A stretch of 34,191 nucleotides of DNA, from NCBI RefSeq assembly GCF_001194135.2, contig NC_068987.1:49327194-49361384 (forward strand), written 5' to 3'. The DNA comes from Octopus bimaculoides. Its lineage: Eukaryota. This document shows, piece by piece, positions 31,145 through 33,293 of this stretch (its first letter is position 1; each line of letters begins with the position of its first letter). The translations under genes were made by a program, and so were the position numbers. The notes below the pieces were generated by a model. The model ran no database searches. It was not told the origin of the DNA and saw nothing but the letters and a program-made list of their open reading frames with translations.

Positions 31145-32100
31145 TGTAAGTATGTATGTGCACATATATATGTATTTAAATATAAATAAACCTAAATTCA
31201 TGTGTACATGTATATAAACATATGGCTCATACCTACAGAACAAGATCCAATTAGTATGGACATTTATAAATATACTTATACAGGCACATGTTTACATATA
31301 TATTTATGCACAAACATGCATACATATAAATATACACACATAAATGTATACATATACATGCACATTAAAAAGCAAATGCATGAATATATATAACTAGTCA
31401 CAAAGGATGTAGAGTAAACACTTCTATTGGGTGAAACTGTCAAAGGGATTATCAAAAGTAAAGTTTCAAATAAATCACATATAATAAATAATATTTAAGA
31501 TTAAAACAATCAAGAGTGAAGGTAAAGAAGTTGGAAGGTGTAGAATGAAAGAACCAGGACAGTCATCAAAGAGTAACAACTTCAGCCTTACTTAAATGGT
31601 TTATTTTACAGCATAAAAATGTATGGACTAAGTAGTCATTAAGTAGTTTTACATAACAGAAGAATGACTGAATATGATCAAATACACTATAAATTATAAA
31701 GGGGAAAATGAGTTATGGTCCTCATTGGATAGGAAAGTAGTCACTCTCCTTAATCAAAATCATAAGGTTTATTAATTTAGGTCTGATAAGTTAATCTAAG
31801 GTTAGGTATACATAGTGTATAGGAATGACTTATTTCTAAGATGCTAGCATCTTATAATTGATTTATCATGTTGATTAGTAATATTTGATTTTATTCTACT
31901 AATGTAGGTTACTTCTGATACAGAGGACCCACACCAACCACCACTACCACCACCACCACCACCACCTTTATATGACTGTGCATAACATACAATGGACCAA
32001 GCAATTTTATATTCAATGTTATTAATTAGTGAGAGAATGTACAAATTTAGCTAAAGATGTACTACTAGGCTTATTTTTATGCCTAAGTGTAGGTTTGTAA

Positions 32101-32709
32101 ATAGAAATATTAATATTTCTAAGTCTCTCTAAAGGAGACTATGGCAACGGTACTGGATATTAATAGTTATTGCCAAGCCAGCATGGCAGTCCAAAAAAAT
32201 AGGACAAATGCTGCTGTTGATTAGCCCCAAGAGGCCATCGCCTCCAGCTAGCTATGTGACACACAAACCTGTGTCCATTATAACCTTCGAACAAGGGAGG
32301 TCAGCAGCTTCCCCTTGCTGATGTGGCATCTACAGACTAGTTTCAGGGTATTTGCCCCTTATCAATGTAGAGCAGCCGAACCCAGCGGGCATCGTGACTA
32401 ACCGTTTGTACAAAGGATTATTTACCTAAATTCAGTGGAATACATCCACTGGTTTTCAAAAATAGAAATATTAATATTTCTAAGTCTCTCTAAAAGAGAC
32501 TATGGCAGCAGTACTGGATATTAATAGTTATCGCCAAGCCAACATGGCAGTCCAAAAAAATAGGATGAATGCTGCCGTTGATTTTATAATGGACACAGGT
32601 TCATGTGTTACATAGCTAGCTAGAGGCGATGGCCTCTTGGAGCTAATCAATGGCAGCATTTGTCCTATATTTTTGAACTGCCATGTTGGCTTGGCAATAA
32701 CTATTAATA
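32101..32709 (-). mobile_element. Non-coding retrozyme-like/Penelope-type element: about 1.3 tandem copies of a 361-bp unit plus an inverted arm
   Basis: 13-bp direct repeat tgtaggtttgtaa at 32088-32100 and 32710-32722. Segment 32101-32222 is repeated at 32462-32583 (8 differences in 122 bp by eye). Segment 32157-32283 is inverted at 32584-32710. One hammerhead per unit; no long ORF. Confidence 0.85.
32329..32371 (-). ncRNA. Minimal type I hammerhead ribozyme with variant core UUGAUAA
   Basis: Minus strand reads tctaca TTGATAA gggg caaata ccct GAAA ctag TC tgtaga. Stem I has 6 bp, stem II has 4 bp with a G-U closing pair, stem III is the palindrome ACTAGT, and the cleavage triplet is GUC. 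Confidence 0.8.
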
Positions 32710-33293
32710 TGTAGGTTTGTAATTATTCCAGTAAAGTCTGAATGTGGAAGAGAATGCACTGATACATATGAAGAGTGAATTTTGTGTATATATTTAGATT
32801 TCAACTGTTGATATAACCAGGATGTTCTGGTAATTTGATGAACTTTCTTTATTTGCATTAATCTGTGAATAAACAATTGTATTGTATAATGATGAGCACA
32901 CATTAGTACATACATGTATGCATAATTTCTGATACACTGAAATTAATACTACATGAAGAAGGTTGCGAAATGGCTGTAATCCTATAGAAGCATATAGTTA
33001 GAGAAATCTTTGTTCACCTCTCATGTGTCCTGACTTTATGTTTTTAAATATTCCGAATAGAATAATTTTATCTAGATTTTCAGTTACATGGACACTATAC
33101 ATTGCACTACCTTGTAACTGATTAGTACGTGAACTGATAGCCAAGTCCATATGAGGAGCATGATTCTCTGAATCCATATCTTATACTACTCATTTACACG
33201 CACACATCATTTGTAGAAAACATAAACCCGAAAGAAGAAGCACACTCTAAGATGTAGAGCAGTATATATTAAAAATGGGGGAGGCCAGTTTAT

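What the first reader, a model, noticed from the sequence alone, without database searches (positions are those of the whole stretch)
32088..32722. Retrozyme-like element: non-coding 361-nt unit with a hammerhead, partial tandem, inverted arm and 13-bp target-site duplication
Seen: tgtaggtttgtaa is duplicated at both ends; there is a 361-bp period (32101 vs 32462), a 127-bp inverted arm, one type I hammerhead fold per unit and no ORF. Known: Penelope-like elements carry minimal type I hammerheads in their pseudo-LTRs and insert as partial tandems or inversions. Metazoan non-LTR retrozymes are short hammerhead-bearing tandem repeats that yield small circular RNAs. Inference: this is a non-autonomous family mobilised by Penelope machinery, and multimeric transcripts would be cut into ~361-nt monomers. 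I cannot tell whether this cephalopod family has already been described.
Basis: partly seen in the sequence, partly recalled or inferred. Interest (0 to 1): 0.85.

Follow-up and report, generated by a model that had tools for sequence, protein, structure and literature searches.

The report
Hammerhead retrozyme insertion with Penelope-style layout
This is one old, decayed insertion of a short non-coding mobile element that carries a self-cleaving hammerhead RNA motif and is laid out like a Penelope-type retrotransposon insertion; it looks like a new member of the known animal "retrozyme" kind, not a new kind of element.

Summary
A 609-bp insert (32101-32709) lies between two exact copies of TGTAGGTTTGTAA. 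It consists of one 361-nt unit, a 122-nt second direct copy and a 127-nt inverted copy, and it has no ORF. A type I hammerhead descriptor hits the 34-kb window once, on the minus strand at 32329-32371. Shuffled sequence gave 0.035 hits per window with the loose descriptor and 0 of 400 with the strict one.

The motif has the canonical metazoan build: helix I of 6 bp, helix II of 4 bp with loop CAAAUA as in Schistosoma, and a 2-bp helix III inside the palindrome ACUAGU. Its core reads U3/A8 instead of C3/G8, a covariation already reported in Schistosoma Penelope hammerheads. It also has a G10.1-U11.1 wobble, probably from CpG decay. Rfam does not detect it.

Read on the hammerhead strand, the layout is inverted copy, direct repeat, body, direct repeat, flanked by a duplication. 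That is the typical Penelope insertion plan.

Only one hammerhead is present, so this locus cannot release monomers. Copy number, host, Penelope partner and cleavage could not be tested. Non-LTR retrozymes and their Penelope link are already published.

Verdict: real, new member of a known kind, moderate interest.

The parts
32088..32100 (.). Left copy of the target-site duplication, TGTAGGTTTGTAA. The last 2 nt are ambiguous with the element end.
   Evidence: The 13-mer occurs only here and at 32710. Chance is about 5e-8.
32101..32461 (-). Full 361-nt non-coding unit. The sense strand is the minus strand, so sense position 1' is 32461 and 361' is 32101. Its 3' part (32101-32222) acts as the downstream direct repeat, the 'pseudo-LTR'.
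   Evidence: GC is 43%. The circular fold has z = -3.3 against shuffles.
32325..32377 (-). Type I hammerhead motif: GGC-UGC-[UCUACA]-UUGAUAA-[GGGG-CAAAUA-CCCU]-GAAA-C-UA-G-UC^[UGUAGA]-U-GCC. The core spans 32329-32371. Cleavage is predicted after C32335.
   Evidence: It is the only descriptor hit in the window. Strict shuffles gave 0 of 400. Helix I pair probability is about 1.0 and helix II about 0.4 in the full unit. The dimer forms an intermolecular ACUAGU helix III. Rfam gives no match.
32102..32121 (.). Perfect 20-nt palindrome TAGAAATATTAATATTTCTA at the 3' end of the sense unit, next to a second hairpin (AGTCTC...GAGACT).
   Evidence: (I3), and the fold.
32462..32583 (-). Upstream 5'-truncated direct copy (sense positions 240'-361'). 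It forms the head-to-tail junction with the full unit and serves as the upstream direct repeat.
   Evidence: It is 93-94% identical to 32101-32222.
32463..32482 (.). Second copy of the 20-nt palindrome, at the head-to-tail junction.
   Evidence: (I3).
32584..32709 (+). Inverted 5'-truncated copy (antisense of sense positions 305'->179'), head-to-head with the upstream direct copy. It lacks the hammerhead.
   Evidence: (I1, I2). It is 92% identical. There is no filler at the 32583|32584 junction.
32710..32722 (.). Right copy of the target-site duplication.

Best explanation
**What it is.** One old retro-insertion of a short, non-coding, hammerhead-bearing retroelement of the metazoan non-LTR retrozyme kind. 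Equivalently, it is a miniature non-autonomous Penelope-type element. Its sense strand is the minus strand.

**Shown**
- The insert is 609 bp between 11-13-bp duplications.
- In sense orientation it reads: inverted 5'-truncated copy (127 nt), direct copy of the unit's last 122 nt, then a full 361-nt unit.
- The unit carries one type I hammerhead with canonical metazoan helix sizes and a U3-A8 core.

**Inferred: integration**
- Staggered nicks at the target gave the duplication.
- One nick primed reverse transcription inside an RNA that was longer than one unit or circular. The copy runs uninterrupted through both the ribozyme cleavage site and the unit junction, and it starts with 2 nt of microhomology.
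- Synthesis ran 1.34 units.
- A second priming or template switch produced the head-to-head inverted piece.
- The enzyme was most likely the reverse transcriptase and GIY-YIG endonuclease of an autonomous Penelope-like element acting in trans.

**Inferred from the literature: family life cycle**
- Tandem copies are transcribed.
- Hammerheads pair as dimers through the palindromic helix III and cut out 361-nt monomers.
- The monomers are ligated into highly paired circles that serve as templates.

**This locus.** It has only one hammerhead and has decayed by about 3-4% per copy, mostly at CpG. It is best read as a dead-end copy.
For: - **Insert anatomy.** Duplication, period and inversion are confirmed.
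- **Hammerhead against chance.** The descriptor hits once in 34 kb. The loose descriptor expects 0.035 hits per shuffled window and the strict one gave 0 of 400.
- **Match to the published architecture.** PMC4209133 describes canonical metazoan type I hammerheads as helix I 6 bp, helix II 4 bp, and helix III 1-2 bp with a 2-4-nt palindromic loop.
- **Match to a published sequence.** Loop 2 CAAAUA and the GAAAC-NN-GUC plan equal the Schistosoma sequence quoted in PMC5666329.
- **U3-A8 is a known variant.** It is a reported natural covariation in Penelope hammerheads (PMC4209133).
- **U3 and A8 predate the insertion.** Both are non-CpG changes, while per-lineage non-CpG divergence here is only about 1-2.5%. 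They were therefore most likely already in the template, and they are exactly the compensating pair.
- **U11.1 is probably decay.** It sits in an inferred CpG (CCCCGAAA to CCCTGAAA). The window CpG o/e is 0.20, and 8 of 16 differences between the paralogous copies are CpG-type.
- **Folding.** The circular unit has z = -3.3 and keeps helices I and II. The dimer forms an intermolecular helix III.
- **Two orientation cues agree.** The hammerhead strand is the strand on which the inversion is 5' and head-to-head, which is the commonest Penelope layout (PMC3846280; PMC8557442).
- **Retrozyme properties.** Unit size, GC and duplication fit non-LTR retrozymes (PMC7229834).
- **3' end.** There is no poly(A) or simple-repeat tail.
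Against: - Rfam's hammerhead models give no match, even at E<=10 in 96 nt.
- Two core positions and the 10.1-11.1 pair differ from the consensus, and activity is untested.
- Only one copy was available, so there is no covariation test and no evidence that a family exists.
- The hammerhead lies between the direct repeats, whereas Penelope hammerheads are usually inside the pseudo-LTR.
- No Penelope ORF is in the window. The only reverse transcriptase there is a LINE remnant.
- A 13-bp duplication and a 5' inversion are also typical of LINE-type twin priming.
- This is a 1.34-mer, not the dimer-to-multimer array that defines retrozymes.
Confidence: 0.7

Rival explanations
1. The element is the same hammerhead-bearing non-autonomous unit, but it was mobilised by a LINE-type (non-Penelope) reverse transcriptase. 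The 5' inversion then arose by classical twin priming.
For: - A duplication of 11-13 bp and a 5' inverted, truncated segment are hallmarks of LINE twin priming (established knowledge).
- A LINE reverse-transcriptase remnant lies in the window.
- Two hairpins at the 3' end of the unit could serve as a recognition stem for a stringent LINE.
- PMC7229834 itself leaves 'LINEs or PLEs' open.
Against: - There is no poly(A) or microsatellite tail at the 3' end.
- The unit has no sequence similarity to the LINE remnant or to anything else in the window.
- A more-than-unit tandem with direct repeats plus a head-to-head inversion is the specific Penelope pattern.
- Type I hammerheads and the U3-A8 variant are tied to Penelope elements.
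Confidence: 0.15
2. It is not an independent family but a fragment of an autonomous Penelope element, either a solo or truncated pseudo-LTR or a one-off internally deleted copy.
For: - The direct and inverted repeat layout is that of Penelope insertions.
- Solo pseudo-LTRs and internally deleted derivatives are described in Adineta vaga.
- No second copy could be found to prove that a family exists.
Against: - A head-to-tail junction with a 361-nt period (32461|32462) means the copied template repeated every 361 nt with no ORF. A solo pseudo-LTR would show no such junction.
- The hammerhead is of the canonical retrozyme type, not the minimal Penelope type.
Confidence: 0.08
3. The hammerhead-like fold is a chance or dead motif in an unrelated interspersed repeat or rearranged satellite piece, and has no ribozyme role.
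For: - Rfam finds no hammerhead.
- The core differs at C3 and G8, and 11.1 is U.
- The loose descriptor finds a hit in 3% of shuffled windows.
Against: - The strict descriptor gave 0 of 400 shuffles.
- Loop 2 is identical to the Schistosoma ribozyme.
- The two core changes are the one compensating pair already known in nature.
- The whole-unit fold keeps helices I and II.
- The motif strand agrees with the orientation deduced independently from the insertion layout.
Confidence: 0.07

Closest known systems
Metazoan non-LTR retrozymes (Cervera & de la Pena 2020, PMC7229834), for example the mussel, coral and axolotl families
   Same: - Non-coding unit of a few hundred nt (361 here; the paper gives 150-450).
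- GC below 45%.
- Canonical-architecture type I hammerhead with a weak palindromic helix III suited to dimers.
- Highly paired predicted circle.
- Target-site duplication longer than 4 bp.
- Head-to-tail repetition.
   Different: - Only 1.34 units and one hammerhead at this locus, not a dimer-to-multimer array.
- A 5' inverted segment is present.
- The core is U3-A8, not C3-G8.
- Expression, circles and copy number are untested.
Penelope-like elements and their insertion architecture (Arkhipova et al. 2013, PMC3846280; Craig et al. 2021, PMC8557442)
   Same: - Two direct repeats from a partial tandem, plus an inverted 5'-truncated copy head-to-head upstream.
- Short duplication (8-10 bp reported; 11-13 here).
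- A palindrome inside the repeat.
- No poly(A) tail.
- Pseudo-LTRs alone can carry foreign inserts in trans.
   Different: - No RT/GIY-YIG ORF; the body is only 239 nt.
- The hammerhead is in the body, not in the repeat.
- There is no 30-40-bp 'tail'.
- The palindrome is at the 3' end of the repeat, not the 5' end.
U3-A8 hammerhead variants of Schistosoma mansoni Cercyon Penelope elements (Cervera & de la Pena 2014, PMC4209133)
   Same: The catalytic core shows the same covariation, U3-A8 in place of C3-G8, in a retroelement-borne type I hammerhead that probably works as a dimer.
   Different: The Schistosoma motifs are 'minimal' hammerheads with helix II of 7-8 bp, a short helix I and no real helix III. 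This one has the canonical 6-bp/4-bp helices, loop 2 CAAAUA and a 2-bp helix III.
Schistosoma Sm-alpha and newt satellite 2 hammerhead repeats
   Same: - SINE-like or satellite-like repeats of about 330 nt.
- Type I hammerhead with loop 2 CAAAUA and a GAAAC-NN-GUC palindromic helix III (sequence quoted in PMC5666329).
- The stem I bulge plan also looks alike, but that comparison rests on my memory of the Sm-alpha structure and was not tested here.
   Different: - Helix I and II sequences differ through compensatory changes.
- The core pair is U3-A8.
- The insertion layout includes an inversion.

Membership tests
Hammerhead ribozyme, type I (canonical metazoan form) | Type I topology: helix I open, and helices II and III closed. 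Sizes are about 6 bp, 4 bp, and 1-2 bp with a 2-4-nt palindromic loop. | tested here: met
   - Helix I is UCUACA/UGUAGA, 6 bp.
- Helix II is GGGG/CCCU, 4 bp.
- Helix III is AC/GU around UA, inside the palindrome ACUAGU.
- Sources; criteria from PMC4209133.
Hammerhead ribozyme, type I (canonical metazoan form) | Conserved GAAA box and a U16.1-H17 cleavage site. | tested here: met
   GAAA is followed by C-UA-G-UC, so the cleavage triplet is GUC, ending at C32335 on the minus strand.
Hammerhead ribozyme, type I (canonical metazoan form) | Conserved CUGANGA box (C3...G8). | tested here: inconclusive
   The sequence is UUGAUAA, so C3 is U and G8 is A. The literal consensus is not met. However, these two positions pair with each other, and U3-A8 is a reported natural covariation (PMC4209133). 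Activity is unknown.
Hammerhead ribozyme, type I (canonical metazoan form) | G10.1-C11.1 pair at the base of helix II. | tested here: not met
   The pair is a G10.1-U11.1 wobble. U11.1 lies in an inferred decayed CpG (CCCTGAAA), in a window with CpG o/e 0.20.
Hammerhead ribozyme, type I (canonical metazoan form) | Match to the Rfam hammerhead covariance models. | tested here: not met
   There is no hammerhead match at the gathering score, or at E<=10 in 801 nt or 96 nt.
Hammerhead ribozyme, type I (canonical metazoan form) | Self-cleavage at the predicted site. | not testable with these tools
   This needs in vitro transcription of monomer and dimer constructs.
Metazoan non-LTR retrozyme | Short non-coding unit (150-450 bp) with low GC, and no LTR or coding features. 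| tested here: met
   The unit is 361 nt with 43% GC. The longest stop-free frame is 64 codons. A protein search found nothing. PBS and PPT motifs were not searched specifically.
Metazoan non-LTR retrozyme | Tandem arrangement, from dimers to multimers, with one hammerhead per monomer. | tested here: inconclusive
   A head-to-tail junction is present, but there are only 1.34 units and a single hammerhead.
Metazoan non-LTR retrozyme | Target-site duplication, when present, longer than 4 bp. | tested here: met
   The duplication is 11-13 bp.
Metazoan non-LTR retrozyme | Many genomic copies, and expression as highly paired circular RNA. | not testable with these tools
   No source genome or RNA data were available. 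Only the predicted pairing could be checked: z = -3.3. Scans of metagenome, viral and prokaryotic collections found nothing.
Penelope-like element (insertion architecture) | Direct pseudo-LTRs from a partial tandem, plus an inverted 5'-truncated copy head-to-head upstream, flanked by a short duplication. | tested here: met
   In sense orientation the layout is inverted (305'->179') | 240'-361' | 1'-361', between duplications. Compared with PMC3846280 and PMC8557442.
Penelope-like element (autonomous) | A single ORF with reverse transcriptase and GIY-YIG endonuclease. | tested here: not met
   The element has no ORF. The only RVT_1 hit in the window is a LINE-type remnant at 25931-26353. At most, the element is a non-autonomous derivative.
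Penelope-like element (insertion architecture) | Hammerhead located within the pseudo-LTR. | tested here: not met
   The hammerhead is at sense positions 91'-133', between the direct repeats (240'-361').
Penelope-like element (non-autonomous derivative) | Sequence homology of the unit to the terminal repeat of an autonomous Penelope element in the same genome. | not testable with these tools
   The source genome was not available, and no Penelope element lies in the window.

The most novel reading that the evidence does not exclude
The family would use a natural U3-A8 catalytic core within an otherwise canonical, tertiary-stabilised type I hammerhead. Insertions like this one (more than one unit, running through the cleavage site, copies identical at insertion, head-to-head inversion, duplication) would be direct structural footprints of Penelope machinery copying a circular retrozyme RNA by rolling-circle reverse transcription.
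Probability: 0.25. Interest if true: 0.55.

Novelty: new member of a known kind. Interest (0 to 1): 0.38.

Why it matters
The published link between animal retrozymes and Penelope-like elements rests on co-occurrence and on sequence similarity to pseudo-LTRs. A 361-nt non-coding hammerhead unit inserted with the full Penelope layout is a third, structural kind of evidence. That layout is direct repeats, a head-to-head inversion and a duplication. The evidence can be checked genome-wide by simple repeat analysis.

The locus also shows that the template was longer than one unit or circular. In addition, it offers a natural U3-A8 core in a canonical-architecture hammerhead, which is a ready test case for how far the C3-G8 pair can vary in vivo.

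The element class, its proposed mechanism and the U3-A8 variant are all already described, and this single decayed copy proves none of the functional steps.

Tried and rejected
- **Rfam.** I scanned the whole window at the gathering score, then 801 nt and 96 nt at E<=10. None gave a hammerhead. The only hits were weak miRNA- or scaRNA-like matches caused by the inverted arms.
- **Other copies through spurious ORF calls.** The 62-aa stop-free frame of the unit found nothing among 5.8 billion proteins.
- **Other copies by DNA pattern.** The exact hammerhead pattern and a relaxed one (Y3/R8, free helix II) found nothing. The exact pattern was run on metagenome and viral contigs, and the relaxed one on metagenome and prokaryote-genome contigs.
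- **Sampling the same genome through its LINE.** The reverse-transcriptase remnant finds 1377 relatives, but the best are only 50-75% identical. The one locus fetched (L001) shares nothing else with the window. The source genome therefore appears not to be in these collections.
- **Host identification.** A 101-aa ORF downstream gave no homologue. No tRNA genes were found. 'Cephalopod' stays unverified.
- **Literature.** No paper in the library links hammerheads or retrozymes with cephalopods beyond a passing mention in PMC8557442.
- **DNA transposon or MITE reading, rejected.** The inverted arm matches internal unit positions 57-183, not the other terminus. The ends share only a 12-nt AT-rich similarity (I10).
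- **Solo pseudo-LTR reading, rejected.** The 361-nt head-to-tail junction rules it out.
- **In-situ mutation as the origin of U3/A8, judged unlikely.** Both are non-CpG changes, and the chance of both arising since insertion is roughly 6e-4 at the locus's own non-CpG divergence.
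Full report
**1. Observation**

The sequence at 32088-32722 is as described.
- TGTAGGTTTGTAA occurs exactly twice in the window, at 32088 and 32710, and not on the other strand. The chance of such a match at a fixed pair of positions is about 5e-8.
- Between the two copies lie three pieces: a full unit at 32101-32461, a second direct copy of its first 122 nt at 32462-32583 (93-94% identical), and an inverted copy of unit positions 57-183 at 32584-32709/10 (92%).
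- There is no filler at any junction.
- The last two bases of the left duplication (AA) also match the end of the unit. The duplication is therefore 11-13 bp with 2 nt of microhomology.
- Removing the insert gives a clean empty site.
- No frame is open for more than 64 codons. A 62-aa frame has no relative in the protein collection.
- No other copy of the unit is in the window.

**2. The hammerhead**

On the minus strand, 32377-32325 reads GGC UGC [UCUACA] UUGAUAA [GGGG CAAAUA CCCU] GAAA C UA G UC^ [UGUAGA] U GCC.

I wrote a type I descriptor with these requirements:
- helix I of at least 5 bp;
- a YUGANRA box with positions 3 and 8 either C-G or U-A;
- helix II of at least 3 bp;
- GAAA, then 0-10 nt, then U and a non-G base.

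It hits the 34-kb window once, at this site. In 400 dinucleotide-preserving shuffles of the window, the loose descriptor gave 0.035 hits per window. The strict version gave none; it requires helix I of at least 6 bp, helix II of at least 4 bp and a palindromic helix III insert.

The helix sizes match the published description of canonical metazoan type I hammerheads: 6 bp, 4 bp, and 1-2 bp capped by a 2-4-nt palindromic loop, working as dimers (PMC4209133). Loop 2 (CAAAUA) and the GAAAC-NN-GUC plan are the same as in a Schistosoma mansoni ribozyme quoted in PMC5666329, and helix II differs from that ribozyme at all four pairs while staying paired.

Folding results:
- A 68-nt piece keeps helices I and II as a monomer.
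- As a dimer it adds a 6-bp intermolecular helix III from ACUAGU, at -39.4 against 2 x -16.5 kcal/mol.
- In the full 361-nt unit the minimum-energy fold keeps both helices. Pair probabilities are about 1.0 for helix I and about 0.4 for helix II.

**3. Deviations from the consensus**
- The core has U3 and A8 in place of C3 and G8, and 11.1 is U, giving a G-U wobble at the base of helix II.
- Rfam gives no hammerhead match at any threshold tried. That counts against a textbook hammerhead.
- C3 and G8 pair with each other in the active fold (established knowledge). U3-A8 was reported as a natural covariation in about 1300 Penelope-borne hammerheads of Schistosoma (PMC4209133). It is the only paper in the library that mentions it.

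The locus offers an internal clock. The three paralogous copies differ at 16 columns. Fifteen are transitions, and eight are CA/TG-type changes at inferred CpG sites. The window CpG o/e is 0.20.
- The copies were therefore probably identical at insertion and decayed in place.
- U11.1 sits in exactly such a site (CCCCGAAA to CCCTGAAA), so it is probably decay.
- U3 and A8 are non-CpG changes. At the locus's own non-CpG divergence of about 1-2.5% per lineage, both arising after insertion has a chance of roughly 6e-4. They were almost certainly in the template RNA.
- That the only two changes in the CUGANGA and GAAA boxes are the one compensating pair argues for a selected variant rather than random decay. 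This is an inference from one copy.

**4. Orientation and layout**

Two independent cues agree. The hammerhead is on the minus strand. On that strand the insert reads: duplication, inverted 5'-truncated copy (antisense 305'->179'), direct copy 240'-361', full unit 1'-361', duplication.

That is two direct repeats around a 239-nt body, with a head-to-head inverted copy upstream. It is the typical Penelope insertion described in Adineta vaga: two direct and one inverted pseudo-LTR, duplications of 8-10 bp, and palindromes in the repeat (PMC3846280). Craig et al. also describe it (PMC8557442).

The unit ends in a perfect 20-nt palindrome plus a second hairpin. There is no poly(A) or simple-repeat tail.

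Differences from Penelope elements:
- no ORF;
- the hammerhead lies in the body, not in the repeat;
- there is no 30-40-bp tail.

**5. Mechanism**

Shown: the copied template repeated every 361 nt. The copy runs uninterrupted through both the predicted cleavage site (32335|32334) and the unit junction (32462|32461). The insertion ends 234 nt downstream of the cleavage site.

A linear, ribozyme-cut monomer primed at its 3' end is therefore excluded. The template was either a circle or an uncleaved multimer, primed internally with 2 nt of microhomology.

Inferred: target-primed reverse transcription ran over 1.34 units, a second priming or template switch gave the inversion, and staggered nicks gave the duplication. 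Penelope machinery is the best candidate, and a LINE enzyme is the main rival.

The family-level cycle is taken from PMC7229834. It runs from array transcription, through dimeric cleavage into 361-nt monomers and ligation to circles, to reverse transcription. None of it was tested here.

This locus has one hammerhead with a helix III that needs a partner, so it cannot release monomers. It is best seen as a dead-end copy. Li et al. 2026 interpret monomeric copies as offspring that cannot transpose. If transcribed, the arms would form about 127 bp of double-stranded RNA.

**6. Comparison and novelty**

The element meets most testable features of metazoan non-LTR retrozymes: size, 43% GC, no coding capacity, a duplication longer than 4 bp, a strongly paired predicted circle (z = -3.3) and a type I hammerhead of canonical architecture. 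It falls short on array length.

Retrozymes, their presence in molluscs, their proposed mobilisation by Penelope elements (PMC7229834) and their derivation from Penelope pseudo-LTRs (bioRxiv 10.64898/2026.07.22.740005) are all published. So is the U3-A8 core (PMC4209133).

Two things may be new: the combination of a U3-A8 core with canonical helices and loop 2, and a single insertion that shows the Penelope layout for a retrozyme-sized unit. I found no paper on cephalopod hammerheads or retrozymes. I also could not confirm that the window is from a cephalopod.

**7. Limits**

Every attempt to reach other copies, the host genome or a Penelope partner failed. Family status, partner and activity therefore remain open.

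**Verdict.** This is a real feature. It is a new member of a known kind, with interest of about 0.38.

Noticed in passing
window 25931-27053 (minus strand): Decayed LINE-type reverse-transcriptase remnant. RVT_1 matches at E = 4.8e-9 in 25931-26353, and stop-free pieces continue upstream to 27053. The best database relatives are only 50-75% identical, so the source genome seems absent from the protein collection.
   Followed up: partly
whole window: The window looks like a draft eukaryotic assembly. GC is about 35% and CpG o/e is 0.20, with TpG and CpA in excess, which indicates heavy CpG decay. N gaps lie at 9871-9880, 12005-12014, 13405-13978, 16486-16838, 20693-20702 and 22295-22959. The three long gaps (13405-13978, 16486-16838, 22295-22959) adjoin (AT)n, (TG)n or (TATA)n microsatellites.
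   Followed up: partly
window 19963-20370, 21174-21619, 21772-22169, 33899-34151; parts at 28589-28751 and 30142-30343: A dispersed repeat family of about 400 nt, in both orientations, at 70-81% identity. It is probably a SINE-like element. It has no hammerhead and is unrelated to the finding.
   Followed up: no
window 1724-2240 and 10654-10930: A repeat of about 270 nt that starts with (AAT)n. It is present as a 244-nt-period tandem of 1.8 copies and as a third dispersed copy (78-81%).
   Followed up: no
window 33263-33423 and 33703-33864: An inverted repeat of 162 nt (85%), about 280 nt apart and 550 nt downstream of the element. It encloses a 97-aa ORF (33445-33738, minus strand) that has no homologue and no Pfam match. 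It may be another foldback or inverted insertion.
   Followed up: partly
window 32157-32283 paired with 32584-32710: If the locus is transcribed, the inverted arms give about 127 bp of near-perfect double-stranded RNA. This explains the weak miRNA-like Rfam matches, and it could feed small-RNA or RNA-editing pathways.
   Followed up: partly
window 14224-14471, 15430-15686, 15853-16001: Three copies of another repeat of about 250 nt, at 75-78% identity, within 2 kb.
   Followed up: no
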